Shown: positions 13,825 to 32,037 of the stretch, one piece after another
Numbering within the stretch: position 1 is the stretch's first letter
Layout: each line of letters starts with the position of its first letter
IMG/VR virus record: IMGVR_UViG_3300044646_001937
Coordinates: 62,001 to 126,000 of that record
DNA: 64,000 nucleotides
Strand: one strand, 5' to 3'
Notes under the pieces: model-generated
Told to the model about the DNA's origin: nothing
The model's database searches: none
The model's input: the letters and a program-made list of their open reading frames with translations, nothing else
Translations under genes and position numbers: made by a program

Positions 13825-13836
13825 TCTATTAAAGCA

Positions 13837-15279: not shown

Positions 15280-15340
15280 TTTATGTTAAACCTTGGTTTT
15301 TGCATAAATTAACTTATAATAGGTATTATCGTTAGCGTAT

Positions 15341-15880: not shown

Positions 15881-15892
15881 TTTAACATAACT

Positions 15893-16984
15893 ATGTTAGG
15901 CTTTTCTTTTTCAGCTTTAGCGGGACATAAAGAGCCTATAGTTAGGGTGACTAGCTTGGCTAATCCTCCTGCTCCAGATCCTGATGGATTGCCTGTTTTG
16001 CAGAATGTGGTTGTATCGGGAACAACAACAACTCAAACGTATGTAACCTGGACGCTAGGCACAGACGACGATGCAGGAGTTACTATTTGCCATGTACAAT
16101 GCTATAGCTCTCAAGTGGAGGGGGTTTCTAATATTTATGTAACCTCTAAGACAGGAAGAATTACAGCACTTGTCGACTCTTTAACTCCTGGAACTACATA
16201 CACAGCAAAAGTAAGTGCTATAAGATACGCATCAGGAGGCGCGGAATATTCTTCAGATGGTTGGGCGTATTCAAATTCGTTTTTAACTTTGAGCGTACCT
16301 AGTGATTTTACGGGACTCAAAGACAGTGTGTGGTATATAAACGGTGAACCAGCTGCAGGTTTATCTAATACAGGTACTGGCGTATATAATGGAGAATATT
16401 ATATACAGGGAAATGCTACCGGATTTCAATATGTTCCTAGTTTAGGCTGGTGCGGTATATGGGCGGGTTTGACATACATTGGAGGAAATGTCGCGAACGG
16501 ACGGTATTATTGCTCTAGCTGCACTCCTGAGCAACTTTGGTTTGTAAATGGTGGCCCAATACAGAATTTATATTTTGTGAATGGAGTAGCAATAGATTAT
16601 ACTCTCGCTACAGCAGCAAGCGGTACGGGTAGTTTTGGCGGTGTTTATTATAGTAATTGGCAGCCATACACAGGATCTGTAAATGGCACATATTATAACT
16701 ATGGGCAATCTACAACCTTGGATTCTTCAGGCTCAGGCACTGTATCAAATGGAGATACCTCATTGTATTATGTAAATGGACAAAAATTTACAGGCCAAAA
16801 TACTTCATCAGGGATATTTTACATTAATGGGGTCGCTACAGATCTAGGTCCTGACGGTACAGGTGTTGTGGATGGTAAATACTATTATGGTGGTATGTAT
16901 GTGGGCGAAGTGGCAAATCCTTACGATTCAGGCCAAACATCCAGTCAGGGTAGCAGGTTTAGCGCAGGAGTTACTTACGCTTAA
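15893..16984 (+). CDS. FN3-like domain plus YYxNG repeat protein
   Basis: VTWT...SLTPGTTYTAKVSA FN3-like signature; repeats WYING, YYIQG, YFVNG, YYVNG, FYING. Confidence 0.6.
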   Translation: MLGFSFSALAGHKEPIVRVTSLANPPAPDPDGLPVLQNVVVSGTTTTQTYVTWTLGTDDDAGVTICHVQCYSSQVEGVSNIYVTSKTGRITALVDSLTPGTTYTAKVSAIRYASGGAEYSSDGWAYSNSFLTLSVPSDFTGLKDSVWYINGEPAAGLSNTGTGVYNGEYYIQGNATGFQYVPSLGWCGIWAGLTYIGGNVANGRYYCSSCTPEQLWFVNGGPIQNLYFVNGVAIDYTLATAASGTGSFGGVYYSNWQPYTGSVNGTYYNYGQSTTLDSSGSGTVSNGDTSLYYVNGQKFTGQNTSSGIFYINGVATDLGPDGTGVVDGKYYYGGMYVGEVANPYDSGQTSSQGSRFSAGVTYA

Positions 16985-16985
16985 T

Positions 16986-18053
16986 ATGATTACTGAAAAA
17001 TATATACTAGATAAAATAGCGTTTTGCTTTGCCAGGCCTAAAGATCTAACAGTCTTTTTTGCTATAATTGATCCTGATGTTTGGCCTGGAGAACCACCTG
17101 ATTTAAATCTACCTAAAGACAAAGATCTCATATGGAGTGAGCCTGTTAATGGAGTTTATTTGATCAACTTGCCGCTGATGGCCATGTTTAAACCTAAGCT
17201 TACTAGCATTGAGGAATTGTTTTTAGAAATTATTGATGCTGGTTTTAAAATTCAATCCAATAGATTCACTGTTCCATCTAAGTCAGCTTTACTTTCTATT
17301 ACCCCCATCACAGACAAACCATCTATAGCCGTAGTAAGTATGTTTTCTCCTAAAGGGCTACGCAACTATTGGGAACAGTTTTTAATTGATACTTTGCTGC
17401 CTGAAGACGTTTGCGTAGATGTGATATTTGGAGACAATACAGTCAGCGATGATGTTAAAGTTTGGTTTGATGGGTTTAAAGACAGGATGTCTGAAAAATA
17501 CCATAAGGTATACAGAATAGACCTAGGTGCCGCACACAGTTTTCAAGATGACATTAACTATCTTGAGACAAATAAACATGCACACGTAGCTAGAACATAC
17601 TCTAAGTTTATTGGTCAACTAGTAGATCATTACGATTATATTTTAAAAGTGGAAGATGATATGGAGCCTACCCCGGACGGGTTATTGCGATTGTACACGC
17701 ACATGAAAACGCTTAAAAGCAACAATCCAAAGATTGCTTCTGTGGCTGGTTATTACCCACAAAAAATGGATCCTACTACCGCTTGCATAAGCATGCAGCC
17801 AAAGGTTTGGGGTAAAATTCCTAAAATAAAAAATATCAAACCAAAACTATTTAGAGTAGAGATGCAGGGAGGGGGATTTACTCTATACAATACTGAAGCA
17901 CTTAAAAAAGTTCTTCCATACAGACTAGTTTTTAAAACGCTTTCAGGTAATTTTTATATGACAGGTTGGGACGGATATATCGGTGAAGAGTGGTCTAAGC
18001 TTGGGTGGAGGCAGTATTGCGACGGATCAATACTCTGTAACCATCATTATTAG
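16986..18053 (+). CDS. GT-A fold glycosyltransferase-like protein
   Basis: YDYILKVEDD acidic motif and GGGFTLY; ATG at 16986 after TAAT. Confidence 0.55.
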   Translation: MITEKYILDKIAFCFARPKDLTVFFAIIDPDVWPGEPPDLNLPKDKDLIWSEPVNGVYLINLPLMAMFKPKLTSIEELFLEIIDAGFKIQSNRFTVPSKSALLSITPITDKPSIAVVSMFSPKGLRNYWEQFLIDTLLPEDVCVDVIFGDNTVSDDVKVWFDGFKDRMSEKYHKVYRIDLGAAHSFQDDINYLETNKHAHVARTYSKFIGQLVDHYDYILKVEDDMEPTPDGLLRLYTHMKTLKSNNPKIASVAGYYPQKMDPTTACISMQPKVWGKIPKIKNIKPKLFRVEMQGGGFTLYNTEALKKVLPYRLVFKTLSGNFYMTGWDGYIGEEWSKLGWRQYCDGSILCNHHY

Positions 18054-18084
18054 GGAAGGCGGATTAAAAAATATTATAGTGTTC

Positions 18085-18113
18085 TCGATTTTTTGTTCTG
18101 TTTGCGTTATAAT
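18085..18113 (+). promoter_or_regulatory. sigma70-like promoter
   Basis: TCGATT-17-TATAAT in intergenic gap. Confidence 0.5.
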
Positions 18114-18139
18114 AAATGTATCGCAACACAACAAAATAG

Positions 18140-19270
18140 ATGAATAACTATATACTTAAGCCAGATAAAATAGCTAAAGAATTTGAGGACGATCCTTCTA
18201 GTGTAAGAGGCATTGCAGCTAGATTGACTTATTGCGGAAGAAACACAGGCAACCTGGTTTATTACAAAGGTATTGAGTCTGTACTCTCACAGGACATACC
18301 TGTAGCAGATTGGTTTGATGTCCCTAAAGACGCAGATAATTTAATATTACCTGCAGCAAATCAACTAGGTAGACATACTAACTTAGGAGCGATAGCTAAG
18401 TTATGGGAAGGGTTAGACAAAAATGTAGTCACACTTGGGTTGGGAGTACAATGCAGAACAATACAAGATCTTATAATCACTGACGGTACAAGAAAGTGGT
18501 TAGATTTTTTAGTTAAAAAAGCTGCAGGCAAAAAGTCTTTTCTAGGTGTAAGAGGTAAGACTACTGAGAAGGTAATCAATGATATCTACGGCTACGAGGC
18601 AGCAAGGGTCTGCGGTTGTCCTTCTCAGTTTATTTCTACTCCTGAATTTATACTAAGTAATATAAAGAACAGGCTTGATAAGCCTCTACTGAGTTTGAGC
18701 GTTAATTCTGCCGAGCCAGGCTTAAGAATGTTTGATAAATATACTACAGCATTAATAAATGAAATCATTAAATATGATGGGAGTTATATGCTACAAGCTC
18801 CCGAGCATAGTCTAGTGAGGATACTTAGGAAAAGCGTGGATGAAGATTTAAGCGAAGGTAAATTGGATTTTGATCCTAAAGATTTACACAACATAGACTG
18901 TTCTAATTTCTTTAGAAATAAAGCGACAGCTTTTTTCAATATGGGTGAATGGCAAGATATGCTGCATCGCTACGACTATAATATAGGCTTCAGAATACAT
19001 GGAACAATGTTTTCTCTAGCCTGTGGTGTTCCTTCCTTTTTGATCAATGTTGATGAACGTACTCGTGAGTTTGCTGAAACGATGATGCTTCCATATACAG
19101 AAGATTACAAAATTAGCGACATTGTAGGCTACGCTAAAGAAAGGATGATAAATCATGATTATGAGGGAATGTTAAAAAAGTGGAAAAGTAATGCTCAGAT
19201 GTTTAGGCAACTTATGGAAACTAACGAGATAGAGCTTTCTAAGCAATTTTTAACTTTTTGGTGCAATTAA
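18140..19270 (+). CDS. polysaccharide pyruvyltransferase family protein
   Basis: NTGN, GVRG..T, GCPS, GFRIHG motifs in family order. Confidence 0.8.
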   Translation: MNNYILKPDKIAKEFEDDPSSVRGIAARLTYCGRNTGNLVYYKGIESVLSQDIPVADWFDVPKDADNLILPAANQLGRHTNLGAIAKLWEGLDKNVVTLGLGVQCRTIQDLIITDGTRKWLDFLVKKAAGKKSFLGVRGKTTEKVINDIYGYEAARVCGCPSQFISTPEFILSNIKNRLDKPLLSLSVNSAEPGLRMFDKYTTALINEIIKYDGSYMLQAPEHSLVRILRKSVDEDLSEGKLDFDPKDLHNIDCSNFFRNKATAFFNMGEWQDMLHRYDYNIGFRIHGTMFSLACGVPSFLINVDERTREFAETMMLPYTEDYKISDIVGYAKERMINHDYEGMLKKWKSNAQMFRQLMETNEIELSKQFLTFWCN

Positions 19271-19274
19271 ATTT

Positions 19275-20813
19275 ATGGATAACTTATATTTACCGATACC
19301 AAAAGACTTTGTTGTATCTACATACAGAAAGTTAAATAAAGACATTCATGATTACAATGACATGGAGTGTCGAATACACTACATTGTTATAGGAAAAAAA
19401 GAAGGAAGGGCGTATAACATTAAAGATCTTCTGCCTGCAGATTTTCTGGCTGAATCATACGTGGAATATAATGTCGATCTTACTGGCATGTCTGAGCTGC
19501 AACTACAAGAGCACTATGTATTGCACGGCAAAAAAGAGCAAAGAATTTATTCTGTAGATTTACCTGACGATTTTGACGTTGAAGTGTATCGCTACATGAA
19601 TAGAGATATTTTTGATCAAACTGACGGATGGTTGAAGAGACACTATTATCAGCACGGGCAATACGAACAGCGTATATACTCTGATAGGCTGTACGATAAA
19701 TCTTTTTTTATTAATTACAATAATTTACATGAATCTGCCACATATGCAGATTATTTAAGTGATATTAGACAAATAAAATCTCAAGAGATTTTAGATATAA
19801 TCAACAGTACTCCTGACTTAGACGGTTATTTGCTGCTAGTGAGTCACGACAATTCAATTTACGGAGCTACTCATTATCTGTATTTATTGTTTGAATACCT
19901 CAGGTCTAAAAATTTTAAAGTAAAAATTTTAGATGCTGATTTTAACCCAATGCTTAAAGAAAAGTATGCAGTGAGTGATAGCGATATCTTATACTATAAA
20001 AAAGATGCTACGCTGCTATACCATATTTGCGTTAAAGCAAACCCTAGAAAAATATTTTTTAACTCTATGAGTTTCCCTATGGCGGAAGCTGCGAAATACC
20101 TTAATAGAGAAAGGTTAATAATTCACAGTCATGAAGTAAGACCTCACTATATATGTAGTTATCCTCCTGATTTCGTAGTAGCCAATACGATAGCTGAGCA
20201 ATATGAAGAATTACCTAAAGTACAACCTCCCATTATTTCTAATGAAACTTTAAAGCTGATAGACATCGAATTTGCTAAGCAGTCTTGTGTTAAAAATTAC
20301 TTAGGTGAACTGCAAACTGATAAAATTACTATAGGGATGTGTGGTAGTTTAACTACCAGAAAAAACTATAAGTTATTTATTGAGCTTGCTGAAAATTTAA
20401 AGCAGTTTAACTTTTTATGGGTAGGCGGGCATCAGGATGTTGGGGAAGATGTGGATAACTTTTACCATGTCAAAAACGTCGAGTTGCCTTACAGGTATTA
20501 CAATCTGATGGACTATTTTATACTTTGTTCTACAGAAGATCCTTGTCCTTATGTTGTACTGGAAAATCTTTATGTAGGTAATAAGGTTTTAACTTTTGAG
20601 AAAAACATATACACCAGACACGATAAAGTTTTTCTGACTGGACAGTTGTTTGAGTTCCCTGGCGAGATAAGCTATGAGAACGCCTACAAGCATATCGTAG
20701 CTAACTGCAAGAGTAAGAAGACCGCAGATACTCTAAATTACGGTAGGGATTATATTCTGAACAATTACGTTAATTTTAAACAGGAGTATCTTGCCACTTT
20801 GCTGCATACTTAA
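19275..20813 (+). CDS. GT4-type (GT-B) glycosyltransferase with three N-terminal repeats
   Basis: STEDPCPYVVLE..YVG acceptor/donor motif; three repeats of F....Y...N.D......HY...G..E.R. Confidence 0.7.
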   Translation: MDNLYLPIPKDFVVSTYRKLNKDIHDYNDMECRIHYIVIGKKEGRAYNIKDLLPADFLAESYVEYNVDLTGMSELQLQEHYVLHGKKEQRIYSVDLPDDFDVEVYRYMNRDIFDQTDGWLKRHYYQHGQYEQRIYSDRLYDKSFFINYNNLHESATYADYLSDIRQIKSQEILDIINSTPDLDGYLLLVSHDNSIYGATHYLYLLFEYLRSKNFKVKILDADFNPMLKEKYAVSDSDILYYKKDATLLYHICVKANPRKIFFNSMSFPMAEAAKYLNRERLIIHSHEVRPHYICSYPPDFVVANTIAEQYEELPKVQPPIISNETLKLIDIEFAKQSCVKNYLGELQTDKITIGMCGSLTTRKNYKLFIELAENLKQFNFLWVGGHQDVGEDVDNFYHVKNVELPYRYYNLMDYFILCSTEDPCPYVVLENLYVGNKVLTFEKNIYTRHDKVFLTGQLFEFPGEISYENAYKHIVANCKSKKTADTLNYGRDYILNNYVNFKQEYLATLLHT

Positions 20814-20873
20814 AGAAATTAATCTTGTGTAGCTTTTGAGTTTAACGGATACTGACCTATATAGATTCCTGAT

Positions 20874-21989
20874 ATGAAAAATGATATAGTTATATATTCT
20901 CCTACAGTTACGCACTTAGAAAATCTCAATGTGAGACTTAGCGTCGAGGTTTTAATAGCTGAGGAAAAAAAGATTCTCTGGTATGAGACAGCTAGCGAGT
21001 ATGAGGCTTTTTTGCTTTCTGAGCGTATGGACGCTTTTTTGGTTGCAGTTCTTCCGTTGGCTATGCGCATCAAAAAAAACATAATTTGTGAAGCACCTGT
21101 AACTGAGCAATTTTTACATAATTTAAACCAGTTATTAATACCCCTTCTCTGCAAAGGCGATTCAAGATTATTTCACTCAAAAATTAGTGCTTCTAGTGAT
21201 GCTTCAAAGTTAATCTCTGCAAATGGTGTAGCTACTGGAATGTCTTGTGGGGTTGATAGTTTACATACAACATTAACGTATTTAAATTCGTCGTTTACAT
21301 CGATGAATTTAACGCATCTTTATACCGGTAATTATTTGTACGGCAATAAAGGAGCCATATATGATCGCGCAGATTTAGTTGCAAAAGATTTGAATTTAAA
21401 ATTAGTTAAGACACACACTAATATTTCGGAGCTTTTTAAAGAGTTTAACTTACCTCATGTACCAACCCATTTTTTCAAAACAATCTTCGGAGTGCTATGC
21501 TTGAAAAAGTTATTTAAAATTTATTACTATTCGTCTGCTGGAGATTTTGCTAGTAATTTTTTATTGAAAAATAATTCAGACAAAGACACTACCGATATAG
21601 AGCTTTTGCTTTTATATATGTTTTCAACGCCAGATTTCCAGCTTATCAGTGGAGGAGGAAGTGTTGATAGATTACAAAAAACAAAAGAATTAATTAATTT
21701 TGACCCAGCTCAAAAATATTTAAATGTTTGTTTAAACCCTTATCTAGCGGTTAATTGTGGGAAGTGTGGAAAATGTTTAAGAACTTTATTATCGTTAGAT
21801 ATGCTCGGGGCTTTGGACTTATTCAGAAATGTTTTTAATGTAGATGAATACTTAAAAAACAGGTTAGACGCTTTTATGTTTTTAGTAAAAGGAAATCCGT
21901 CGAGAAACCCTTATTTAAGTGGCGTATACCAGTATTTTTTGACTAAAGAACCAAATTTAATACAGAAAGCAAAAAAGCAATTAAAGTAA
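20874..21989 (+). CDS. PP-loop (adenine nucleotide alpha hydrolase-like) protein with Cys cluster
   Basis: MSCGVDS PP-loop at 21240; LNVC...NCGKCGKC. Confidence 0.6.
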   Translation: MKNDIVIYSPTVTHLENLNVRLSVEVLIAEEKKILWYETASEYEAFLLSERMDAFLVAVLPLAMRIKKNIICEAPVTEQFLHNLNQLLIPLLCKGDSRLFHSKISASSDASKLISANGVATGMSCGVDSLHTTLTYLNSSFTSMNLTHLYTGNYLYGNKGAIYDRADLVAKDLNLKLVKTHTNISELFKEFNLPHVPTHFFKTIFGVLCLKKLFKIYYYSSAGDFASNFLLKNNSDKDTTDIELLLLYMFSTPDFQLISGGGSVDRLQKTKELINFDPAQKYLNVCLNPYLAVNCGKCGKCLRTLLSLDMLGALDLFRNVFNVDEYLKNRLDAFMFLVKGNPSRNPYLSGVYQYFLTKEPNLIQKAKKQLK

Positions 21990-21990
21990 T

Positions 21991-22959
21991 ATGAGTTTGC
22001 CTCCTTTAAAAATAGTGTTAAAAACCAAAGATGAAGATTTTTTAATAGAGTCTTGGCTGGAGTATTACAAAAATCTTGTTGGTGAAGAGAATATAATTAT
22101 TTACGACGACCACAGCACATCGACACATGTGTTGGATACTTATAGTAAGTATAAAAAAGTAGATATCAGAAAGATGCCAAAAGAGTTTGCACATTTTCAT
22201 GGCTTACATACTTATCTTGAACTGCGCGAGGAGATGAAACAAGCGTGCATGTATTACACTATTATAGACACTGATGAATTTTTGTGTTTTTTTGATCACG
22301 ATAAAAAAACAATAGATAATTCTAAGGTTTTAGACTTTATATCAGCAAACAATCATCGTGATGTGTTTCCTACCACATGGATATTTAACATGTACCATGG
22401 TTCATGTTTTAAAAAACTCACAGATGTCAGAGATTTTAATTTTGAGCTGAGTACAGTTAACGTTGATTTGGGTAAAGCGATTGCTTCTAGCAGTGGCAGG
22501 GCAGGTGAAAATATTGGACATAACATTAGCACGGCAACAAATACTTCAAATAAAGTTAAAATGCAATCTTGCCCAGAATTATTATTATTGCATACAAACC
22601 ATGTTAACTGGGAAAGTAGAATTAAAACTAGAATAAATTTTGCTAGGCAGGCTGGAGTAAAATTTAACAGCCTAGAAGAACTACTTGAGCAAATAAAAAA
22701 TAAAAGTAAAAAGACATATCACGAAATCGACATCTTTGAGTATTACACAGATAGAGAAAAATTTTTTAATAACAAAGCAGTTAAAATGCAGCATAACCAT
22801 ATGGTAATGACTACCGACGTGCTTAGCTCGTGGAGCAATAACCAAGCCATATCAAAAACATCCTTAACAGACGTTAATTTTGATCTGCGCGAAAAAATTA
22901 ACAACTTGTTTGAAAGGCAGTTCAACAAACCGGATAAGTTTGATTTTGTTAAAGCTTAA
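21991..22959 (+). CDS. glycosyltransferase family 2-like (Glyco_tranf_2_4 type)
   Basis: KDEDFLIESWLEYY, IYDDHST, IDTDEFL. Confidence 0.7.
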   Translation: MSLPPLKIVLKTKDEDFLIESWLEYYKNLVGEENIIIYDDHSTSTHVLDTYSKYKKVDIRKMPKEFAHFHGLHTYLELREEMKQACMYYTIIDTDEFLCFFDHDKKTIDNSKVLDFISANNHRDVFPTTWIFNMYHGSCFKKLTDVRDFNFELSTVNVDLGKAIASSSGRAGENIGHNISTATNTSNKVKMQSCPELLLLHTNHVNWESRIKTRINFARQAGVKFNSLEELLEQIKNKSKKTYHEIDIFEYYTDREKFFNNKAVKMQHNHMVMTTDVLSSWSNNQAISKTSLTDVNFDLREKINNLFERQFNKPDKFDFVKA

Positions 22960-22982
22960 TATATCTCTTGAAATTTTAAGTT

Positions 22983-24101
22983 ATGGAGGATAAAATAAAT
23001 TTTAAACAACCGCAACTACATTTTATGGACTTAACAAAATTAACCTTACAAGAGATAGATCAGCTAATTGCCCGTACAAGAAAAGAAAAAGTGTTGGAAC
23101 ACCACGACGCGTATGTTTCTGCGCTAGCTCCTGAGGTTACAGAGCTTAGACAAAAATTAATGGAAGCTGACAGACTTTTTCTTGCTCCTCTTCTTAAGCT
23201 AAGAGAAGAAAAAATCTTAGAAGAAGAAATCAAAAAAGCTCTTGAAGAAAACCCTTTAATTAAAGAAGTGGAAAAAGAGGTTACTGGAAAATCCGAAGCA
23301 ACGGCTAAGCCTAATGTGTCGGCTCCTTCAGTCAGTACAAGGCGCAATCACTATCTTCTACCTTTACTTAAGAAGGCTATGGCCGCCAGATGTCATACAT
23401 GGTTAGTCGGTCCTGCAGGTAGCGGTAAATCTACCTTGGCAGCTAATGCCGCAGCAGAATTAAAGATGCCTTATGCTGCACTCAGTGTTTGCAGTCAGAC
23501 TACTAAAACAGATTTCTTGGGTTATCTTGACGCACACGGCGTTTATAGATCTACTAGCTTCCGCGAGATCTATGAGAATGGTGGCATCTTCTGCCTGGAT
23601 GAAGTAGATAACGGAAATGCTAACGTATTGGCTGTGCTTAACAGCTCATTATCTGGAGACGAAACATTGTTCCCTGATAAGGTGGTTAAGAAGCATAAAA
23701 ACTTTGTGGTTGTATCTTGCGCCAACACTTTTGGCCTTGGTTCTTCTATTAGTTATGTCGGACGTACACAGATCGACGCAGCCACACTAGATCGCTTCTT
23801 CTTTGTTGAGATGCCATATGATGACGGTCTTGAAGCTCATGTTGCTGGCTTCCCTGGTGTAGCTTCTCCTAAATGGAATGATGGCGCAGGTAAAGTTCCT
23901 ACAGTTGAATCTTGGTTGGCTACAGTGCAGAAGGTTAGAGATGCTGTGGCTGAGTTGGGAGCAAAAGCAATTATTTCTCCTCGCGCTACCTACAACGGTA
24001 TTGCACTGATTAAGCAGGGAGTGCCTCAGCAGTTCCTTGAAAAGGGTCTTTTGTACAAGAGCCTTTCTGCTGAAACTGTAGCTAAAATTCGCCAGGCTTA
24101 A
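22983..24101 (+). CDS. MoxR/CbbQ/CobS-like AAA+ ATPase
   Basis: Walker A GPAGSGKST, Walker B LDEVD, DAATLDRF arginine finger; N-terminal coiled coil. Confidence 0.85.
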   Translation: MEDKINFKQPQLHFMDLTKLTLQEIDQLIARTRKEKVLEHHDAYVSALAPEVTELRQKLMEADRLFLAPLLKLREEKILEEEIKKALEENPLIKEVEKEVTGKSEATAKPNVSAPSVSTRRNHYLLPLLKKAMAARCHTWLVGPAGSGKSTLAANAAAELKMPYAALSVCSQTTKTDFLGYLDAHGVYRSTSFREIYENGGIFCLDEVDNGNANVLAVLNSSLSGDETLFPDKVVKKHKNFVVVSCANTFGLGSSISYVGRTQIDAATLDRFFFVEMPYDDGLEAHVAGFPGVASPKWNDGAGKVPTVESWLATVQKVRDAVAELGAKAIISPRATYNGIALIKQGVPQQFLEKGLLYKSLSAETVAKIRQA

Positions 24102-24105
24102 TAGC

Positions 24106-24885
24106 ATGGATACAACTATCAAATTCGAATCTACAGAGGATTTTGTAGATTTCGTAGATCATGCCAGCATGATGGATGTACTCAGCTCAGCCAGATCTGG
24201 CTGGGTTGATGGGGCTGTAGCGATACATGACCTATTGCAGAGTTTGTCGTTGTATATTGAACCTGAAAAGTTCTGGAAAGAGTTTAATCCAAATCTAAGT
24301 GGGTTGTTCTTTGATATTGGTCTTGTTTGTGCAGGTATTCCTGAATGCTGGTTAGAACCTCAGGATGCACAGAACAGAGGTTCATATGTATCTACTGATC
24401 CTGACGAAGAACGTAGAATTATCAACATAGGCTACAATGTTACTACTCCATATAATTTCTCTAAAACAAGCGTTATTGAGCGTGGAGCAATTACTGCCAT
24501 TCTTGCCTATCTTTTAGAGCAGTCTGGAAGAGCTGTAAGTATTACGCAGTACTGCAGCATATCCAAGAATAATCATAACTTCTACGGATCTCTAGTTGTT
24601 AAGCCTGCGGATAGATTATTAGACATGGACTTGTTGAGCTTCTGGCTTGTAAGTCCTGATTCTTTCCGTAAATGCTGGATGCGTGTGCTGGAGGGTTTAC
24701 CTAATGCGAAGAAGTTAGGTTTAGATAACGGGATGTACGGTAGTCCTGAACCCTTGTACGGCATCGAGCTTTCTGATGTCTTTGTTAGAGGAATCAGGAA
24801 CAAGGCAGATCTTTGGACAAGACAGGATAGCGTGGATTGGGTGTGCAATTCACTAGAGAAGTTGCAGATTAAATATTTAGTGTAA
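24106..24885 (+). CDS. AAA+ partner protein (degenerate VWA/CobT-like)
   Basis: Directly follows the AAA gene; FDIGLVCAGIPECW resembles phage AAA-partner family motif. Confidence 0.45.
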   Translation: MDTTIKFESTEDFVDFVDHASMMDVLSSARSGWVDGAVAIHDLLQSLSLYIEPEKFWKEFNPNLSGLFFDIGLVCAGIPECWLEPQDAQNRGSYVSTDPDEERRIINIGYNVTTPYNFSKTSVIERGAITAILAYLLEQSGRAVSITQYCSISKNNHNFYGSLVVKPADRLLDMDLLSFWLVSPDSFRKCWMRVLEGLPNAKKLGLDNGMYGSPEPLYGIELSDVFVRGIRNKADLWTRQDSVDWVCNSLEKLQIKYLV

Positions 24886-24892
24886 TAAACAG

Positions 24893-24920
24893 TTGATCTG
24901 TTTTAGTTGCTAGGTATAGT
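24893..24920 (+). promoter_or_regulatory. sigma70-like promoter
   Basis: TTGATC-16-TATAGT, 9 nt before ATG 24930. Confidence 0.45.
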
Positions 24921-24929
24921 CATAGAACT

Positions 24930-26081
24930 ATGCCTACTAACTTACATTGTTTAGGTGTTCCGCACACCGTAACTCACCCAGATTATTCAGCCTGTGCTTT
25001 CACGCAGAAAGTACTTAAGTTCTTGGAGATGTACAAGGACGACCCTAATTATAAAACAATTCATTACGGTCATCCTGACTCATTAACATCTGCACATGAG
25101 CATGTTAATGTAACAAATAACGATATTCTCCAGCAAACTTACGGTAATTATGATTGGCGTAAAAACCAGTTCAAACACGATTCAGGAGATCTAGCGCATA
25201 CAGTTTTTAATTCATGGGCGGCAAAAGCTATTATTGAGCGTAAGCAAAAAGGGGATCTTGTACTAGCCTTCTGGGGAGGTACAGCCCAGGCATGTAATGA
25301 CGCTAATGTAGATGGTGATCTAATTGTTGTTGAGCCTGGTATTGGTTCTGGAGGAGCTTTCGCAAAGTTTAGGTGCTATGAATCGCATCCGTTGAGAGCA
25401 GCATTTGTAGGTACTAATGGAGTAGCCAGATGCTATCCTGAATGGTATTGGCGCGTTGTTCCAAATTATTTCGATCTCAGAAATTTTGACACCACTATGG
25501 AGCGTGAAGACTACGCTTTGTATATTGGGCGTATTGGGGGCAACAAGGGGCTAGATATCGCCATTGACGCTTGTAAGCGTATGGGTATTAAACTGAAGAT
25601 TGCTGGTCAAGGTGGGCCTGAGGGGGTAGGGCTTAAGGAATGGCCTGACCATGTTGAATTTGTCGGCTACGCTGATATTGAGAAAAGAAAAGAATTGATG
25701 GGTAAGGCTAAGTTCGGTTTCTTACTCAGTATTTATTGGGAACCGTTTGGTGGTACAGCTGTAGAGATGATGCTTAGCGGTTGTGTGCCTATTTTAAGTG
25801 ATATGGGTGCAATGACTGAGTATTGTGTAGATGGCTTAAACGGATTTAGGTGCAATACTATGGGCGATATTCTTAGAGCTATCAGGCTTGTTGATACTAT
25901 TGACAGGGATAAGATGATTCAATTTGCTAGAGACAACTTTAGTCTTGAAAACGTGAAGCCTAAGTTTGATCGAGCTTTTGATGATTTTAAAGATGTGTTT
26001 GGCGGTAAGGGTTGGTACGAAGATCACAATCGGCCATTGAAAACTGGACAAGGCTTGAACTACCGCGCATTATATGTATAA
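24930..26081 (+). CDS. GT4 family glycosyltransferase
   Basis: GRI...KG, EPFGGTAVEMMLSG (E-x7-E motif). Confidence 0.85.
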   Translation: MPTNLHCLGVPHTVTHPDYSACAFTQKVLKFLEMYKDDPNYKTIHYGHPDSLTSAHEHVNVTNNDILQQTYGNYDWRKNQFKHDSGDLAHTVFNSWAAKAIIERKQKGDLVLAFWGGTAQACNDANVDGDLIVVEPGIGSGGAFAKFRCYESHPLRAAFVGTNGVARCYPEWYWRVVPNYFDLRNFDTTMEREDYALYIGRIGGNKGLDIAIDACKRMGIKLKIAGQGGPEGVGLKEWPDHVEFVGYADIEKRKELMGKAKFGFLLSIYWEPFGGTAVEMMLSGCVPILSDMGAMTEYCVDGLNGFRCNTMGDILRAIRLVDTIDRDKMIQFARDNFSLENVKPKFDRAFDDFKDVFGGKGWYEDHNRPLKTGQGLNYRALYV

Positions 26082-26961
26082 AAAATCTGTACTTTTTTAT
26101 ACCCAAAATAGATGGGCTTTCGGTCAAATACACCATGCTCTCATTAAGAGATTTTGGGAGCATGGGTATTACTGCCACTTGCTAGACTGGGGACAACATT
26201 ATAGTGAATTAGATTGGAAATTTTTAAATCTTAAATTTGATATATTTGTAACTACACCGGAAGCAATTCGCGCTTTAAAGTATAACAAAATAGACCCAAG
26301 TAAAATTGTATCTGTAGCACACGCTGAAAAAGACATTGTGGGTGGGATAGCCGCGCAAGATGTCAAAATATTTGACGACATTAAATCATTTGGTGTAGTA
26401 AATAGTGATCTAGCAGTTGCTGCGGCCAAGCTGGGTGTTGCTAGAATTCCTGATTTGGTTAAAGTGGGGATAGACTTTGATCATTTCTATTTACAGAAAT
26501 CTGATAGCTTAATCACACTGGGTTATGCTGGTGAAGTTAAGCATATAGCTGCAGATAACGAAGACTGTAAAAGAGCGCATCTTGTGAATACTGTGATGGA
26601 GAAGTCTAAAATAAACTTTAGACAACATCAATTTTTCCACCACCTTGCAATGTCCGGGTACTATTCAACTATAGATGCCTGTATATGCTCATCAAGATCT
26701 GAAACTGCTGGGCTCCCCAACATGGAGGCGGCGGCGGCTGGAAGATTAGTATTGTCTACAGGTGTAGGATACTTCGATGGTTCTTATGGAGTATTGCTAC
26801 GCACTCCTGAGAATGAGTTTGTTGAAGATGCTGTTGCAGCTTTAGAGATGTACAAAGATCCTGCCCTATATTCTGAAGCTTGCGAAAAGTCACAGCAATA
26901 TTCCAGAGATCATCATGATTGGAGTCATCATATTGATGGCTGGTTAAAACTGTTTGCTTAA
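26074..26961 (+). CDS. GT4-like glycosyltransferase
   Basis: SSRSETAGLPNMEAAAAGRLVLSTGVG. Confidence 0.75.
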   Translation: MYKKSVLFYTQNRWAFGQIHHALIKRFWEHGYYCHLLDWGQHYSELDWKFLNLKFDIFVTTPEAIRALKYNKIDPSKIVSVAHAEKDIVGGIAAQDVKIFDDIKSFGVVNSDLAVAAAKLGVARIPDLVKVGIDFDHFYLQKSDSLITLGYAGEVKHIAADNEDCKRAHLVNTVMEKSKINFRQHQFFHHLAMSGYYSTIDACICSSRSETAGLPNMEAAAAGRLVLSTGVGYFDGSYGVLLRTPENEFVEDAVAALEMYKDPALYSEACEKSQQYSRDHHDWSHHIDGWLKLFA

Positions 26962-26962
26962 A

Positions 26963-27727
26963 ATGAATTCAACTAGATATCTAATTAATTGCATAGAGAA
27001 TAGTGTGCCTGTGTCTTTTTCAAAATACGGAGATGGTGAATATTTTGCGGCTTCTGGATGCGCTGGAGCAAACTGTGACGGTGACAGATATACTCTGAAG
27101 CTCAAGGAAGAGCTGATAGATAGTATTAGATATATGGTAGATGTTTCTGAGAATGCAATGATAGGTCAATGGCCTGATGTAAATGTAAAAGCGTTTTGGC
27201 AGAGTCTGTGCACAAAGCAAATAAATTGGGTAGACTACCATACAGTGCTTCCATGCAATAAGGATACGCAAGACAAGATAGAGCTATTGAAGGCTGTTAA
27301 AAAAAGTAGTTTAAATAAAATATACGTATGCAATCCATTGTTAATTAAAGCACAGCATTTGCTGGATATTAACCACATGGTGCATGTGCCTTTTAACAAT
27401 TGGTTTGATACTGAGCTATACTCTAAGGTACTGGAAAATACCGTAAAAGCCATAACTAGCAGTAGGCCGAATATAATTATGACCAGTGCAGGTATGGGAG
27501 CTAAAGTATTAATTGCAGCTTTAAGTAAACAGTTTCCAAATAACATCTATCTAGATTTTGGATCAGCACTGGACAAGATATGTACTAAAAAAACATCTAG
27601 AGGTTGGGAGAGAGATTATGATGCGTACATGCAAGATCTAGCGGACATTCTTCCTAGCGATTGGGATAACCCTATATTCGATAGTGTTTATCTAGCTGCA
27701 GCAGAAACATTCGGGAGGCATTTATGA
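26963..27727 (+). CDS. GT-D fold (DUF1792-like) glycosyltransferase
   Basis: SFSKYGDGEY and YLDFGSALD motifs. Confidence 0.65.
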   Translation: MNSTRYLINCIENSVPVSFSKYGDGEYFAASGCAGANCDGDRYTLKLKEELIDSIRYMVDVSENAMIGQWPDVNVKAFWQSLCTKQINWVDYHTVLPCNKDTQDKIELLKAVKKSSLNKIYVCNPLLIKAQHLLDINHMVHVPFNNWFDTELYSKVLENTVKAITSSRPNIIMTSAGMGAKVLIAALSKQFPNNIYLDFGSALDKICTKKTSRGWERDYDAYMQDLADILPSDWDNPIFDSVYLAAAETFGRHL

Positions 27728-28368
27728 GAAACTGCGTAATTATTACATCTGTAATAGAGCCGTCCAGCGCGCCGTTGAGTTACACAGACAAAAGAAGCGT
27801 ATACTCTAAAGATGAGAGGTACGTCCAGACTCTCGAGACGCTAGAGTCAGTTAAAAAATATATACCTGACACTGACATAGCTATAGTAGAATGCAGTCCT
27901 GTTTCTAAGATGCTGTATGATCTAAGTACAAAAGCAGATGTGTTTTTAAACTTGTACCCTAACGAAGAAATTAGGAAAAACCCTAACAAGGGTGTAGCTG
28001 AGGCAAGGATGCTTCTAGCTATGCTGGATATTATAGAAAAATGGGAGTATCAGAACGTATTCAAGCTTACAGGGCGCTATCTTTTAAATAGCGACTTTGA
28101 CTATTCTCTATGGGACAACAAAAGCATAACAGTTAAAAAAACAAACCACTACTCCGGTCCTTCGATACACACCTTCCTGTACAAGTTCAACAAAGACAGC
28201 ATCTCAAAGCTTAAGGAAATTTGCAGTTATTTAATAGCCAGCAACGACCCAGCTCCAGTTGAGCAAGTTTTTCATAAGTATCTTTCAGACACACCTCATA
28301 TTAGCATAATAGGCAATATTGGCGTCACTGCCAGATGGTCTTGCTATAATCACATAGACCTTTTTTAA
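27724..28368 (+). CDS. glycosylation-associated hypothetical protein
   Basis: FKLTGRY motif; operon context (ATGA overlap). Confidence 0.45.
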   Translation: MRNCVIITSVIEPSSAPLSYTDKRSVYSKDERYVQTLETLESVKKYIPDTDIAIVECSPVSKMLYDLSTKADVFLNLYPNEEIRKNPNKGVAEARMLLAMLDIIEKWEYQNVFKLTGRYLLNSDFDYSLWDNKSITVKKTNHYSGPSIHTFLYKFNKDSISKLKEICSYLIASNDPAPVEQVFHKYLSDTPHISIIGNIGVTARWSCYNHIDLF

Positions 28369-28370
28369 TT

Positions 28371-28928
28371 ATGCAACATTACTATAACACGCTAGGAGAA
28401 GATTGGTTTAATTATAGCCAACTGTATGATCGGTTTGCTAGAGAATGCAGCAACGATTCAATTATTGTCGAGGTTGGATCTTGGGTGGGTAGGTCTATTT
28501 GCTATCTTGGCGTAGAGTTAGTTAATAACAACAAGCTGCCTAAAGTATATGCTGTGGATACTTGGCTAGGGAGTTCTGAACATCAAAATCATGATATAGT
28601 GAAACGAGATGAGCTCTACGCCACTTTCTTAAAAAACATCTCACCTCTGGGAGATTTAATCACACCATTGAGATTAGACTCTTTGGCTGCAGCAGAAACG
28701 TTTGAAAACGAGTCTATTGATTTTTTGTTTCTAGATGCTAGTCATTACTATGAGGACGTTAAAAAGGATATTGTTGCCTGGTATCCTAAAGTGAAGACTG
28801 GAGGCATTTTTTCAGGGCATGACGTAGATGGCGGCTGGCCTGGGGTGAATAGAGCAATTAACGAGAGCCTAGAGCTGCAGGGTTATATTATACCTCCTCC
28901 AGGTAAATGGTTTGAGAAGAAAAAATAA
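28371..28928 (+). CDS. class I SAM-dependent methyltransferase (Methyltransf_24-like)
   Basis: VEVGSWVGRS, IDFLFLDASH, VKTGG.FSGHD. Confidence 0.85.
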   Translation: MQHYYNTLGEDWFNYSQLYDRFARECSNDSIIVEVGSWVGRSICYLGVELVNNNKLPKVYAVDTWLGSSEHQNHDIVKRDELYATFLKNISPLGDLITPLRLDSLAAAETFENESIDFLFLDASHYYEDVKKDIVAWYPKVKTGGIFSGHDVDGGWPGVNRAINESLELQGYIIPPPGKWFEKKK

Positions 28929-29483: not shown

Positions 29484-29485
29484 TT

Positions 29486-31976: not shown

Positions 31977-32037
31977 GCCATGTCGGTGACTTCACCGAAA
32001 TGGTATAAAAGGCTACCCTAACCGGTAGCCTTTTTTT
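31977..32037 (+). terminator. tandem hairpins with intrinsic terminator
   Basis: Hairpin GCCATGTCGGTG-ACTT-CACCGAAATGGT, then GGCTACC-CTAACC-GGTAGCC plus T7. Confidence 0.8.

What the first reader, a model, noticed from the sequence alone, without database searches (positions are those of the whole stretch)
16986..28928. 12-kb glycan-assembly island directly after Thr-rich collagen fibre genes: candidate virion glycosylation system
Seen: GT-A-like, GT2-like, three GT4-like and one GT-D ORF, a pyruvyltransferase, a PP-loop enzyme and a SAM methyltransferase follow the fibre operon on the same strand. GAT/GST tracts occur in at least nine ORFs of two operons. No base-modification gene is visible in the island, nor a sugar-nucleotide synthesis or export gene. 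Known: Bacillus BclA GXT collagen is O-glycosylated on Thr; GT-D enzymes extend glycans on serine-rich adhesins; some phages and giant viruses glycosylate virion proteins. Inference: the phage builds a multi-sugar, pyruvylated and methylated glycan on its own fibres or capsid. Alternatives are host-surface conversion or DNA glycosylation.
Basis: partly seen in the sequence, partly recalled or inferred. Interest (0 to 1): 0.8.

Follow-up and report, generated by a model that had tools for sequence, protein, structure and literature searches.

The report
Variable sugar-building island beside phage fibres
A 204-kb lake-water phage carries, inside its tail-fibre gene block, a 12-kb strain-variable set of about seven sugar-transferring enzymes plus sugar-decorating enzymes; it most likely coats the phage's own collagen-like fibres with a complex glycan, but remodelling of the host surface is not excluded.

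Summary

The virus is not T4-like. It is a freshwater jumbo phage with its own multisubunit RNA polymerase.

In about ten relatives the GT-A gene always comes first, in most of them directly after fibre genes. Behind it lies a 4-6 kb stretch whose content changes from phage to phage: GT8, GT61, GT64, GT92, sulfotransferase, RmlC. Lake samples suggest whole cassettes swapped at gene boundaries. All island enzymes are soluble. The genome has no large membrane protein of flippase or polymerase size, no sugar-nucleotide genes and no hydroxymethylase.

Cytoplasmic glycosylation of virion fibres is the best-supported reading (about 0.45). It is circumstantial. Host-surface conversion, the usual reading of such clusters, remains a strong rival (about 0.3). 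GT clusters beside phage fibres are already known, so this is a new variant of a known kind.

The parts
1327..1352 (+). Hairpin plus T-run terminator that opens the fibre/island block
   Evidence: Custom scan. One of only two strong + strand terminators upstream of 35 kb in the scanned 1-36000 (a third lies at 35344-35374).
2955..4721 (+). Collagen-like fibre protein with G-X-T tracts
   Evidence: 28 G-X-Y triplets, 54% Thr at Y; 13 G[AS]TG motifs.
4764..7211 (+). Collagen-like fibre protein, the richest in GAT/GST
   Evidence: 91 triplets; 46 G[AS]TG motifs; translation.
7252..9165 (+). Tail-fibre-like protein
   Evidence: phrog_972 and phrog_9648 tail fibre/tail protein N-terminal match.
9188..10942 (+). 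Collagen-like, Ser/Thr-rich fibre protein
   Evidence: Pfam Collagen (weak) and collagen-like tail phrogs; 26 triplets.
10942..12570 (+). Collagen-like tail fibre protein. The ATG start at 10942 is more likely than the TTG at 10894.
   Evidence: Pfam Collagen E 4e-7 and 24 tail-fibre phrogs; start from my own gene call.
12574..16984 (+). Four fibre-module genes: 416 aa, 480 aa (tail fibre phrog_7760), 179 aa and a 363-aa fn3 protein with YYxNG-type repeats
   Evidence: Homologues precede ORF1 in L004, L012, L013 and L021.
16986..18053 (+). ORF1: GT-A-fold glycosyltransferase of a new family. It is the conserved anchor at the 5' edge of the island.
   Evidence: AF2 pLDDT 91. GT-A matches at Z 15-19, led by the LH3 accessory domain, Mnn9 and COLGALT1. 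Invariant E223-D224-D225. First island gene in every relative that holds it; directly after fibre genes in most.
18140..19270 (+). Polysaccharide pyruvyl (ketal) transferase
   Evidence: PF04230, E 9e-19. Paired with PP-loop homologues in bacteria.
19275..20813 (+). GT4-like (GT-B) glycosyltransferase with three N-terminal repeats of about 40 aa
   Evidence: Glyco_trans_1_4 and Glycos_transf_1 just under the cut-off. Homologues follow ORF1 in L004, L005, L012, L013, L015 and L019.
20874..21989 (+). QueC/MurL-like PP-loop-type enzyme with a Cys4 cluster; presumed to adenylate a carboxylate
   Evidence: Invariant GxSxGxDS and C286/C295/C298/C301. Atlas neighbours are DUF6395, QueC and MurL, and one cluster is fused to PS_pyruv_trans. 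Bacterial homologues sit beside pyruvyltransferase.
21991..22959 (+). GT2-like (Glyco_tranf_2_4 / GT92-like) glycosyltransferase
   Evidence: PF13704, E 3e-10, over the cut-off.
22983..24101 (+). CobS/MoxR-like AAA+ ATPase. Conserved backbone gene, not shown to be glycan-related.
   Evidence: AAA_5 E 1.5e-14; phrog_249 E 1e-47. 58-87% identical in relatives, against 36-72% for the 5' island genes.
24106..24885 (+). DUF7192 protein, the constant partner of the AAA+ ATPase (backbone)
   Evidence: PF23822, E 1.4e-11. 47-97% identical in relatives.
24930..26081 (+). GT4 glycosyltransferase (phrog_3408)
   Evidence: Glycos_transf_1 E 1e-15; phrog_3408 E 3e-107. 48% identical to the GT that lies between the collagen and tail-fibre genes of Synechococcus phage ACG-2014f.
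26074..26961 (+). GT4-like C-terminal-half protein (phrog_18799)
   Evidence: Borderline Glyco_trans_1_4 (26.9 against a cut-off of 27 bits); phrog_18799 E 3e-55.
26954..27727 (+). GT-D-fold glycosyltransferase (probable start at ATG 26963)
   Evidence: AF2 pLDDT 93.8. The only significant PDB folds are DUF1792 structures 4phr, 4pfx and 5v4a. Invariant D27-G-E29. Atlas neighbours carry PF08759/PF22882.
27724..28368 (+).
   Evidence: Atlas: nearest clusters come from giant viruses and phages. The structural neighbours of the best hit are GT8, GT2 and GT15. Indirect evidence; no Pfam hit.
28371..28928 (+). SAM-dependent methyltransferase of the sugar O-methyltransferase type
   Evidence: Methyltransf_24 E 5e-20. 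The only PDB relative is 6g7d; its identity as a mycobacterial mannoside 1-O-methyltransferase is from my own knowledge.
28986..30772 (+). 165-aa protein and a 428-aa fibre-like protein with an N-terminal G-X-Y tract. The island is bracketed by fibre-type genes.
   Evidence: Translation. The 428-aa protein matches parts of large fibre proteins in L005 and L006.
32009..32032 (+). Hairpin plus T-run terminator that closes the block

Best explanation
Shown: the island is a strain-variable glycan-assembly locus. It sits in a fixed hotspot of a freshwater jumbo-phage lineage, between the tail-fibre genes and a conserved CobS-DUF7192-PhoH backbone.

Inferred mechanism:
1. The genes are made together with the fibre genes.
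2. The soluble enzymes work in the host cytoplasm on host nucleotide sugars.
3. The conserved GT-A enzyme (ORF1) puts the first sugar on fibre proteins, most plausibly on Thr of the G-X-T collagen tracts.
4. The GT4, GT2-like, GT-D and small GT-A enzymes extend the chain.
5. The pyruvyltransferase adds a pyruvate ketal, and the adjacent PP-loop enzyme modifies a carboxyl group, for example by amidation.

The result would be a glycan coat on the virion fibres. Its structure would differ between strains because whole enzyme cassettes are exchanged.
For: Enzyme identities.

Position:
- The island lies on the same strand as the fibre genes with gaps of 1-86 nt. It lies inside a 30.6-kb stretch with no strong terminator between 1327-1352 and 32009-32032, and fibre-like genes sit on both sides.
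- In L004, L006/L007, L012, L013, L019 and L021, ORF1 directly follows fibre genes.
- In L005 the GT genes are interleaved with fibre genes.
- The GT4 of 24930-26081 has its only isolate homologues in an unrelated T4-like cyanophage. There it lies between a collagen protein and the tail fibre, next to a 2OG-Fe(II) oxygenase.

Self-sufficiency for a cytoplasmic protein route:
- No island protein has a hydrophobic segment.
- The genome has no large polytopic membrane protein of the size of a flippase or polymerase, and no sugar-nucleotide genes.

Fold hints:
- The only solved GT-D enzymes extend O-glycans on serine-rich adhesins (the role is from my own knowledge).
- ORF1's top structural neighbours are collagen-modifying GT-A domains.

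Kinship with virion-glycosylating viruses: the GT-D and 214-aa families have close homologues in giant-virus-like contigs. Mimivirus fibril glycans are pyruvylated and O-methylated (PMC8456856).

Variability:
- Relatives carry GT8, GT61, GT64, GT92, sulfotransferase and RmlC in the same slot.
- Contigs from other lake samples break at gene boundaries.
Against: - No direct evidence of a glycoprotein. No isolate, no RNA data and no timing data exist.
- Co-location may only mean that fibres and accessory genes share one plastic region. That is how the same pattern is read in cyano- and pelagimyophages and in jumbo cyanophages (PMC7029224; PMC7824862).
- ORF1's lead over other GT-A folds is small (Z 18.9 against 15-17). 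The LH3 match is to its residues 293-517 and the COLGALT1 match to its N-terminal GT-A domain (residues 49-293); from my own knowledge both are accessory rather than catalytic domains.
- ORF1's sequence relatives are second domains of tandem GT2 proteins, which are typical of polysaccharide synthases.
- The pyruvyltransferase/PP-loop pair lies in bacterial polysaccharide clusters beside giant multi-domain GTs.
- Collagen genes are not always near: about 20 kb away in L016's record, none in L021's 81-kb fragment, and no fibre genes next to ORF1 in L008.
- The terminator argument assumes that the phage's own RNA polymerase obeys intrinsic terminators.
Confidence: 0.45

Rival explanations
1. Host-surface conversion. 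The soluble phage GTs and decorating enzymes act at the inner face of the host membrane on the host's own lipid-linked O-antigen, capsule or EPS intermediates. The host's priming enzyme, flippase and polymerase or ABC exporter finish the job. The changed surface blocks superinfection by competitors or stops progeny from sticking to debris.
For: - This is the standard reading of polymorphic GT clusters next to tail fibres in cyano- and pelagimyophages and jumbo cyanophages (PMC7029224; PMC12801897; PMC7824862).
- Pyruvyltransferases and the PP-loop partner occur in bacterial polysaccharide loci.
- ORF1's sequence relatives are tandem GT2 polysaccharide-type enzymes.
- Cassette-wise variation resembles that of O-antigen loci.
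Against: - Seven transferases build a whole new glycan rather than one side branch, yet no priming transferase, flippase, polymerase, ligase, Gtr-type membrane protein or sugar-nucleotide gene is encoded.
- The island sits inside the structural block, with fibre-type genes on both sides and no terminator between. That is an odd place for an early exclusion function.
- The GT-D fold is so far known only from protein O-glycan extension (own knowledge).
Confidence: 0.3
2. Glycosylation of another acceptor. This could be other virion proteins such as capsid or decoration proteins, a host protein, or a lipid or small molecule. In this case the fibre linkage is only positional.
For: - In mycobacteriophages the known acceptors are the capsid and tail-tube C-termini (as summarised in PMC12619734).
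- The GT4 at 24930-26081 has small-molecule glucosyltransferases among its nearest solved relatives.
- In L008 and L003, island genes occur with no fibre or collagen gene in view on the strand and side of the island genes.
Against: - Nothing in the window points to a specific alternative acceptor.
- The anchor gene ORF1 keeps its place next to fibre genes over 44-75% sequence divergence.
Confidence: 0.17
3. DNA hypermodification: the transferases glycosylate modified bases of the phage genome.
For: Phage GTs are classically DNA glucosyltransferases, and multi-sugar DNA glycans are known (references cited in PMC12619734). The methyltransferase matches a phrog labelled 'DNA methyltransferase'.
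Against: - The genome has no thymidylate-synthase-family hydroxymethylase, and no base-modification gene lies in the island.
- A pyruvyl ketal transferase, a GT-D enzyme and a methyltransferase whose only solved relative I know as a sugar O-methyltransferase all point to a polysaccharide-type product.
Confidence: 0.03

Closest known systems
Polymorphic glycosyltransferase clusters in the tail-fibre hypervariable region of T4-like cyano-/pelagimyophages and jumbo cyanophages ('LPS/capsular polysaccharide modification systems')
   Same: Several paralogous GT families sit next to fibre genes. Content differs between close relatives. No experimental function is known (PMC7029224; PMC7824862).
   Different: Those clusters usually include sugar-nucleotide genes (kinases, nucleotidyltransferases, epimerases) and lie in T4-like genomes. 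Here none is present. The phage is an unrelated lineage with its own RNA polymerase. The slot is anchored by one conserved new GT-A gene and includes GT-D, pyruvyltransferase plus PP-loop enzyme, and a methyltransferase.
Mimivirus/Megavirinae fibril glycosylation gene clusters
   Same: Virus-encoded GTs with a pyruvyltransferase and a methyltransferase; the fibril glycans carry a pyruvate ketal and an O-methyl group (PMC8456856; PMC10117803). Collagen-like proteins occur with collagen GTs (R699, PMC9546862; R699 is among ORF1's fold matches). The GT-D and 214-aa families are shared with giant-virus-like contigs.
   Different: Giant viruses also encode the sugar-nucleotide pathways and replicate in eukaryotes. 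The main fibril protein there is a GMC oxidoreductase, not a collagen tail fibre (PMC11042495, abstract). Here the acceptor is unproven.
Mycobacteriophage virion glycosylation (Freeman et al. 2023, cited in PMC12619734) and virion glycoproteins of jumbo phage XacN1
   Same: Phage-encoded GTs thought or shown to modify virion proteins in the cytoplasm.
   Different: Those phages have one or two GTs, and the acceptors are capsid and tail-tube C-termini. Here there are about seven GTs plus decorating enzymes beside collagen-like fibres. No homology was tested.
Synechococcus phage ACG-2014f locus: collagen protein - GT - 2OG-Fe(II) oxygenase - tail fibre
   Same: The GT is 48% identical to the 24930-26081 protein and lies between collagen and fibre genes.
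   Different: That locus has a single GT with an oxygenase, in a T4-like Kyanoviridae genome. No 2OG-FeII_Oxy_3 gene is present here.
Bacillus BclA exosporium collagen (GXT repeats O-glycosylated on Thr) and Thr-glycosylated worm cuticle collagen
   Same: Collagen-like G-X-T tracts with Thr at the Y position in 50-58% of triplets. Thr glycosylation in these models is from my own knowledge.
   Different: No rhamnose or anthrose pathway genes are present, and no homology of the GTs to the Bacillus enzymes was tested.
Serine-rich-repeat adhesin glycosylation (Fap1/GspB accessory GTs, including the GT-D enzyme dGT1/DUF1792)
   Same: Stepwise cytoplasmic O-glycan extension by soluble GTs. The fold of the 26954-27727 protein matches DUF1792 alone, with a D-x-E motif (PMC9804384).
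   Different: There is no SecA2/Asp export locus and no GtfA/GtfB pair. Sequence identity is only 14-16%. The acceptor would be Thr in collagen tracts rather than Ser-rich repeats.

Membership tests
GT-A fold glycosyltransferases (ORF1, 16986-18053) | Single Rossmann-like alpha/beta/alpha GT-A fold | tested here: met
   AF2 pLDDT 91. 287 PDB matches at E<=1e-3; those listed are nearly all GT-A enzymes. Z 15-19 over residues 109-355.
GT-A fold glycosyltransferases (ORF1, 16986-18053) | Acidic DXD-type metal/nucleotide-sugar motif | tested here: met
   E223-D224-D225 are invariant in 28 homologues. The motif's position relative to the nucleotide site was not checked residue by residue.
Collagen glycosyltransferases (GT25 COLGALT1 / LH3 / Mimivirus R699) | Sequence membership in the family | tested here: not met
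   No Pfam, NCBIfam or PDB sequence hit. Only 9-14% identity in the structural alignments. Sequence relatives are GT2-clan tandem enzymes.
Collagen glycosyltransferases (GT25 COLGALT1 / LH3 / Mimivirus R699) | Transfers sugar to collagen residues | not testable with these tools
   Needs an enzyme assay with G-X-T peptides or fibre fragments.
GT-D fold glycosyltransferases (DUF1792) | GT-D fold | tested here: met
   AF2 pLDDT 93.8. 4phr, 4pfx and 5v4a are the only PDB hits with E<1e-3 (E 6e-8 to 7e-7, TM 0.54-0.57); the next hit has E 0.016.
GT-D fold glycosyltransferases (DUF1792) | DXE Mn2+-binding motif | tested here: inconclusive
   D27-G28-E29 are invariant in 30 homologues, and the motif is defined in PMC9804384. 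Superposition onto the DUF1792 motif was not inspected.
GT-D fold glycosyltransferases (DUF1792) | Pfam GT-D / GT-D-like model over the cut-off | tested here: not met
   PF22882 scores 16.9 bits against a cut-off of 27. A few homologues and atlas clusters do carry PF22882 or PF08759.
PP-loop ATP pyrophosphatases | SGGxDS-type PP motif | tested here: inconclusive
   Invariant G122-x-S124-x-G126-x-D128-S129 (S-C-G-V-D-S), a variant of the motif. Neighbours are QueC/MurL/DUF6395-like only by language-model features and by models of the best hit.
PP-loop ATP pyrophosphatases | Significant match to a PP-loop family or solved structure | tested here: not met
   No Pfam or NCBIfam family. No PDB hit even with a profile at E<=1. 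Only weak DUF6395 matches in 14 of 23 members.
Polysaccharide pyruvyl transferases (PF04230) | Family model over the cut-off | tested here: met
   68.8 bits against a cut-off of 25.3.
Phage 'LPS / capsular polysaccharide modification' clusters | Several polymorphic GT genes that differ between related phages | tested here: met
Phage 'LPS / capsular polysaccharide modification' clusters | Accompanying sugar-activation genes (sugar kinase, nucleotidyltransferase, epimerase) | tested here: not met
   No PF01370 or PF00483 match in the 204-kb genome. RmlC is present in the relatives L006/L007.
Phage 'LPS / capsular polysaccharide modification' clusters | Changes the host surface polysaccharide | not testable with these tools
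   No host and no isolate are known.
Virion-protein glycosylation systems of viruses (mycobacteriophages, chloroviruses, Mimivirus) | Virus-encoded GTs within or next to structural genes | tested here: met
Virion-protein glycosylation systems of viruses (mycobacteriophages, chloroviruses, Mimivirus) | Glycan covalently bound to a virion protein | not testable with these tools
   Needs virions or heterologous co-expression followed by mass spectrometry.
DNA glycosylation systems | Hydroxymethylpyrimidine synthesis (ThyA-family hydroxymethylase) or another base-modification gene | tested here: not met
   No PF00303 match in the genome. None in the island.

The most novel reading that the evidence does not exclude
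A lineage of freshwater jumbo phages that encode their own RNA polymerase keeps a dedicated, rapidly exchanging 'glycan toolbox'. It holds GT-A, GT4, GT-D, GT8, GT61, GT64 and GT92 enzymes with pyruvyl, methyl and sulfo decoration, partly shared with giant viruses. The toolbox dresses the phage's collagen-like tail fibres in strain-specific glycans made in the bacterial cytoplasm. This would be a phage counterpart of the Mimivirus fibril coat. The conserved new GT-A enzyme (ORF1) would act as a Thr-directed collagen O-glycosyltransferase, and a pyruvyltransferase/PP-loop pair would make an amidated pyruvate ketal.
Probability: 0.35. Interest if true: 0.8.

Novelty: new variant of a known kind. 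Interest (0 to 1): 0.55.

Why it matters
Protein glycosylation of tailed-phage virions is documented in only a few cases.

If fibres of abundant lake phages are glycan-coated, several things follow:
- Host-range prediction from fibre sequence alone would be incomplete.
- Phage-phage and phage-grazer recognition could depend on sugars.
- The many 'LPS genes' annotated in aquatic phages would need re-reading.

The locus also offers three concrete and testable enzyme leads:
- a new GT-A family tied to fibres;
- a viral GT-D family shared with giant viruses;
- an uncharacterised pyruvyltransferase/PP-loop pair that also occurs in bacterial polysaccharide loci.

If the rival reading is right, the locus is one more example of host-surface conversion. 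That would be useful but ordinary.

Tried and rejected
- T4-like identity. The first GT4 hit pointed to T4-like cyanophages. The T4 late promoter TATAAATA is absent upstream of the genes, and the window encodes split RNA polymerase beta/beta' subunits whose nearest isolates share about 30% identity. Rejected.
- Megablast of the island against 50,697 phage records found nothing.
- Sequence searches of PDB gave nothing useful for ORF1, the GT-D family, the PP-loop family, the 512-aa GT, the 295-aa GT and the pyruvyltransferase.
- The 214-aa ORF is not homologous to the DUF5672 protein that occupies a similar place in L004.
- A sigma-70 promoter and terminator consensus scan of 14-34 kb stayed at chance level. 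Only my stricter hairpin scan was informative.
- No repeats that would mark cassette borders, apart from a 15-nt match at the starts of two genes.
- No Rfam family and no tRNA in the window.
- No RNA run holds the sequence, so timing of expression could not be read.
- DNA glycosylation is rejected as unlikely.
- CobS and DUF7192 as part of the glycan system: rejected as unsupported. They are the best-conserved genes of the region and belong to the backbone.
- The Freeman et al. paper could not be read. It is cited only through PMC12619734.

Full report
WHAT THE WINDOW IS

The window is bases 62001-126000 of a 204,454-bp IMG/VR virus record with terminal repeats, judged complete. It encodes split multisubunit RNA polymerase beta/beta' subunits at 56825-59830 and 61382-63232. 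Their nearest isolate relatives, Salmonella phage Arash and some Vibrio phages, share only about 30% identity. Near-identical DNA occurs in lake-water and freshwater metagenomes. So this is an uncultivated freshwater jumbo phage of a poorly known lineage. It is not a T4-like phage: no T4 late promoter precedes the genes.

CHECK OF THE OBSERVATION

From 1369 to 31976 all long ORFs run on the + strand.

The first part holds fibre genes:
- 2955-4721, 4764-7211, 9188-10942 and 10942-12570 carry long G-X-Y tracts with Thr at the Y position in 50-58% of triplets and Ala or Ser at X. They match collagen and tail-fibre families.
- 7252-9165 and 13837-15279 match tail-fibre phrogs.
- 15893-16984 is an fn3 protein.

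Nine window ORFs have at least four G-X-Y triplets and seven have at least two G[AS]TG motifs. They lie in a + block and a - block at 41-47 kb.

The island itself (16986-28928) holds twelve ORFs, not nine.

Firm calls:
- Pyruvyltransferase, 18140-19270 (PF04230, E 9e-19).
- GT2-like enzyme, 21991-22959 (PF13704).
- GT4, 24930-26081 (E 1e-15; phrog_3408, E 3e-107).
- Methyltransferase, 28371-28928 (Methyltransf_24, E 5e-20). Its only solved relative is 6g7d. From my own knowledge that is a mycobacterial mannoside 1-O-methyltransferase, which points to sugar rather than DNA methylation.

Borderline GT4-like calls:
- 19275-20813, which also has three N-terminal repeats of about 40 aa.
- 26074-26961.

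- ORF1 (16986-18053) folds with pLDDT 91 into an N-terminal domain of about 108 residues plus a GT-A domain. The PDB matches listed are nearly all GT-A enzymes, and E223-D224-D225 are invariant.
- The 26954-27727 protein folds with pLDDT 93.8. Its only significant PDB neighbours are the three DUF1792 GT-D structures; the next hit has E 0.016. D27-G-E29 is invariant, as expected for the DXE motif that defines GT-D enzymes (PMC9804384). Its probable start is the ATG at 26963.

The 'PP-loop enzyme' (20874-21989) is supported only in part.
- For: an invariant G-x-S-x-G-x-D-S and four invariant Cys, and QueC/MurL/DUF6395-like neighbours by language-model features.
- Against: no PP-loop family or solved structure passes any threshold.

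- A CobS/MoxR-like AAA+ ATPase at 22983-24101.
- A DUF7192 protein at 24106-24885.
- A 214-aa ORF at 27724-28368. Its nearest clusters come from giant viruses and phages, and the structural neighbours of its best hit are GT8, GT2 and GT15 enzymes.

WHAT THE SURROUNDINGS AND RELATIVES SHOW

ORF1 homologues exist only in metagenomes. I read about ten related loci.

The common layout in the close relatives is:
1. Fibre genes, namely homologues of the 480-aa, 179-aa and fn3 proteins, often with collagen genes.
2. ORF1.
3. 4-6 kb of variable genes.
4. CobS, then DUF7192.
5. Sometimes further GTs.
6. The 165-aa and 87-aa proteins, then PhoH, then the 203-aa protein.

Backbone proteins are far better conserved than the 5' island genes. 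In L013, CobS is 87% identical, DUF7192 97% and the GT4 of 24930-26081 93%. ORF1 is 72%, the 512-aa GT 43% and the GT2-like enzyme 36%.

The variable slot holds other enzymes in other phages:
- GT8, GT92, GT61 and RmlC in L006/L007.
- GT64 and two GT61 in L012.
- GT92-like, GT8, a sulfotransferase, DUF6625, GT61 and a Methyltransf_24 in L016.
- DUF5672 and a DXD sugar-binding GT in L004.

In L005 the GT genes are interleaved with large fibre proteins. In L026 the 3' cassette (295-aa GT, GT-D, 214-aa ORF, methyltransferase) is kept as a unit.

Contigs from other lake samples were laid on 17000-22990.
- One sample has ORF1 at about 98% identity but nothing at 85% or more alike beyond 18.1 kb.
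- Another sample matches up to 20789, the end of the 512-aa GT gene, and then runs on unlike.
- Contigs show presence rather than absence. Even so, the breaks fall at gene boundaries, as expected for cassette exchange.

The island is therefore a hypervariable hotspot anchored by ORF1.

Collagen linkage is frequent but not strict.
- G-X-T genes lie within 10 kb upstream in L004, L006/L007, L013 and L019.
- They lie about 20 kb away in L016's record.
- They are absent from L021's 81-kb fragment.
- In L008, a 323-kb contig, ORF1 with two GT92 genes lies next to PSCyt1/PSD1/DUF1501 genes, not fibre genes.
- L003, a fragment with a lambda-type tail protein L, carries the PP-loop/GT2/pyruvyltransferase/GT set among nucleotide-metabolism genes.

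An independent case is the T4-like Synechococcus phage ACG-2014f. Its homologue of the 24930-26081 GT (48% identity) lies between a collagen protein and the tail fibre, next to a 2OG-Fe(II) oxygenase.

OTHER EVIDENCE ON FUNCTION

- No island protein has a hydrophobic segment. The genome has no polytopic membrane protein of the size of a flippase, polymerase or priming transferase.
- The genome has no Epimerase, NTP_transferase, 2OG-FeII_Oxy_3 or thymidylate-synthase-family gene. The enzymes must therefore use host nucleotide sugars, and DNA glycosylation through hydroxymethyl bases is unlikely.
- On the + strand, no strong hairpin terminator lies between 1327-1352 and 32009-32032. TATAAT-like boxes precede fibre genes and island genes alike. 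Fibre genes and island probably share transcription; this is inference.
- Bacterial homologues of the PP-loop protein (50-58% identity, about 545 aa) lie directly after a pyruvyltransferase, beside giant multi-domain GTs, in an Oxalobacteraceae and a Marinobacter genome. This is not so on a Paracoccus plasmid. One atlas cluster fuses the two domains. The pair is thus a functional module; I infer that it modifies a carboxyl group.
- The GT-D family has homologues at 44-52% identity in contigs with RING, Ulp1-protease, SWIB, HSP70 and topoisomerase IA genes. By my reading these are giant-virus contigs. The atlas places the nearest clusters of both the GT-D protein and the 214-aa protein in Nucleocytoviricota and Uroviricota.
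- ORF1's GT-A domain has 277 representative relatives (E up to 0.001) in the 50%-identity library. Most of those sampled are second domains of tandem GT2 proteins. The full-length architecture is confined to this phage group.

MECHANISM AND RIVALS

I commit to cytoplasmic glycosylation of the virion fibres as the most likely mechanism, at about 0.45. ORF1 would start the chain, the other transferases would extend it, and pyruvylation, carboxyl modification and O-methylation would finish it.

What is shown: the enzyme types, the position, the variability, and the lack of membrane and sugar-activation genes.

What is inferred: the acceptor, the order of steps, and the timing.

The main rival is conversion of host surface polysaccharide, at about 0.3. 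That is how the literature reads similar clusters (PMC7029224; PMC7824862). The polysaccharide-type relatives of ORF1 and the bacterial context of the pyruvyltransferase/PP-loop pair favour it.

Against the rival:
- Seven transferases are present but no priming or export function.
- The location is inside the structural block.

Another acceptor (0.17) and DNA modification (0.03) are weaker options.

COMPARISON AND NOVELTY

Already described:
- GT clusters beside phage fibres.
- Virion glycoproteins in jumbo phage XacN1 (PMC5852040).
- Glycosylated mycobacteriophage capsids and tail tubes (via PMC12619734).
- Pyruvylated and methylated glycans on Mimivirus fibrils (PMC8456856).

New here:
- The lineage.
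- The fixed hotspot with a conserved new GT-A anchor.
- The particular enzyme set (GT-D, pyruvyltransferase plus PP-loop enzyme), and in relatives eukaryote- and giant-virus-type families plus a sulfotransferase.
- The strain-level cassette exchange suggested in lake samples.

I rate it a new variant of a known kind, with interest 0.55.

Noticed in passing
window 56825-59830 and 61382-63232 (+): Split multisubunit RNA polymerase beta/beta'-like genes. The nearest isolate phages (Salmonella phage Arash, Vibrio phages D69/D181/D148) share only about 30% identity, so the phage belongs to a barely described jumbo-phage lineage.
   Followed up: partly
window 22983-24885 (+): A CobS/MoxR-like AAA+ ATPase with a DUF7192 partner. 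It is the best-conserved gene pair of the region in all relatives, and its role is unknown. In L008 a similar ATPase pairs with DUF2201 instead.
   Followed up: partly
window, intergenic sites such as 1353-1368, 2935-2954, 18110-18125, 28950-28965: TATAAT-like boxes, often preceded by G or TG, lie only 6-40 nt upstream of start codons of 29 genes across the genome. No T4-type TATAAATA late promoter is present. The promoter class and the polymerase that reads it are unknown.
   Followed up: partly
window 12574-13824 and 15893-16984 (+): Fibre-module proteins full of short aromatic repeats (W/Y-Y-x-N/D-G). By eye they resemble cell-wall or glucan-binding repeats and could be sugar-binding receptor modules. 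No family hit apart from fn3.
   Followed up: no
window 19275-19700 (+); L006 9550-9993: Three repeats of about 40 aa (…Y..N.D………HY…G..E.R.Y) at the N-terminus of the 512-aa GT. In L006/L007 and L020 the same repeat region forms a separate ORF of about 147 aa just before ORF1. It may be a targeting or binding module.
   Followed up: no
L010, L011, L025: Homologues of the GT-D protein at 44-52% identity sit in contigs with RING finger, Ulp1 protease, SWIB, HSP70, DnaJ, XPG and topoisomerase IA genes. By my reading these are giant-virus contigs, which points to a glycosyltransferase pool shared by giant viruses and phages.
   Followed up: partly
L008 (323-kb contig), 13633-19286: An ORF1 homologue with two GT92 genes lies next to PSCyt1/PSD1 and DUF1501 genes, which from my own knowledge are families typical of Planctomycetota and Verrucomicrobiota. 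A faint PSCyt2 hit also marks the 184-aa protein after PhoH in L006, which is homologous to window 32955-33566. This is a possible clue to the host.
   Followed up: no
L003 (12.7-kb fragment): The PP-loop (80% identical), GT2-like, pyruvyltransferase and 512-aa-GT genes occur in a contig with a lambda-type minor tail protein L, a GMP-reductase-like gene, a GH46 enzyme and a dCMP deaminase. The module moves between unrelated phage types.
   Followed up: partly
window 41028-46828 (-): A second, minus-strand block with collagen-like tracts of different make-up: 41028-42827 is Ser-rich at X, 42831-45395 has few Thr, and 46328-46828 is GAT-type. None of these proteins matches a phrog.
   Followed up: no
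window 24922-24936 and 28978-28992: A 15-nt near-repeat (ATA-G/C-A/G-ACTATGCCTA) spans the start codons of the GT4 gene and of the 165-aa gene, at the two edges of the 3' cassette. It could be a recombination joint or only a shared start context.
   Followed up: no
window 17000-22990, in runs X5 and X7: Contigs from other lake and crustacean-associated samples match ORF1 at 95-99% identity but lose likeness at 18.1 kb (X7) or 20.8 kb (X5), both at gene boundaries. This is strain-level replacement of island cassettes.
   Followed up: partly
window 10894-10942 and 26954-26963: The mechanical ORF starts (TTG) are probably too early. ATG 10942 and ATG 26963 are the likelier starts of the fourth collagen gene and of the GT-D gene.
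   Followed up: partly
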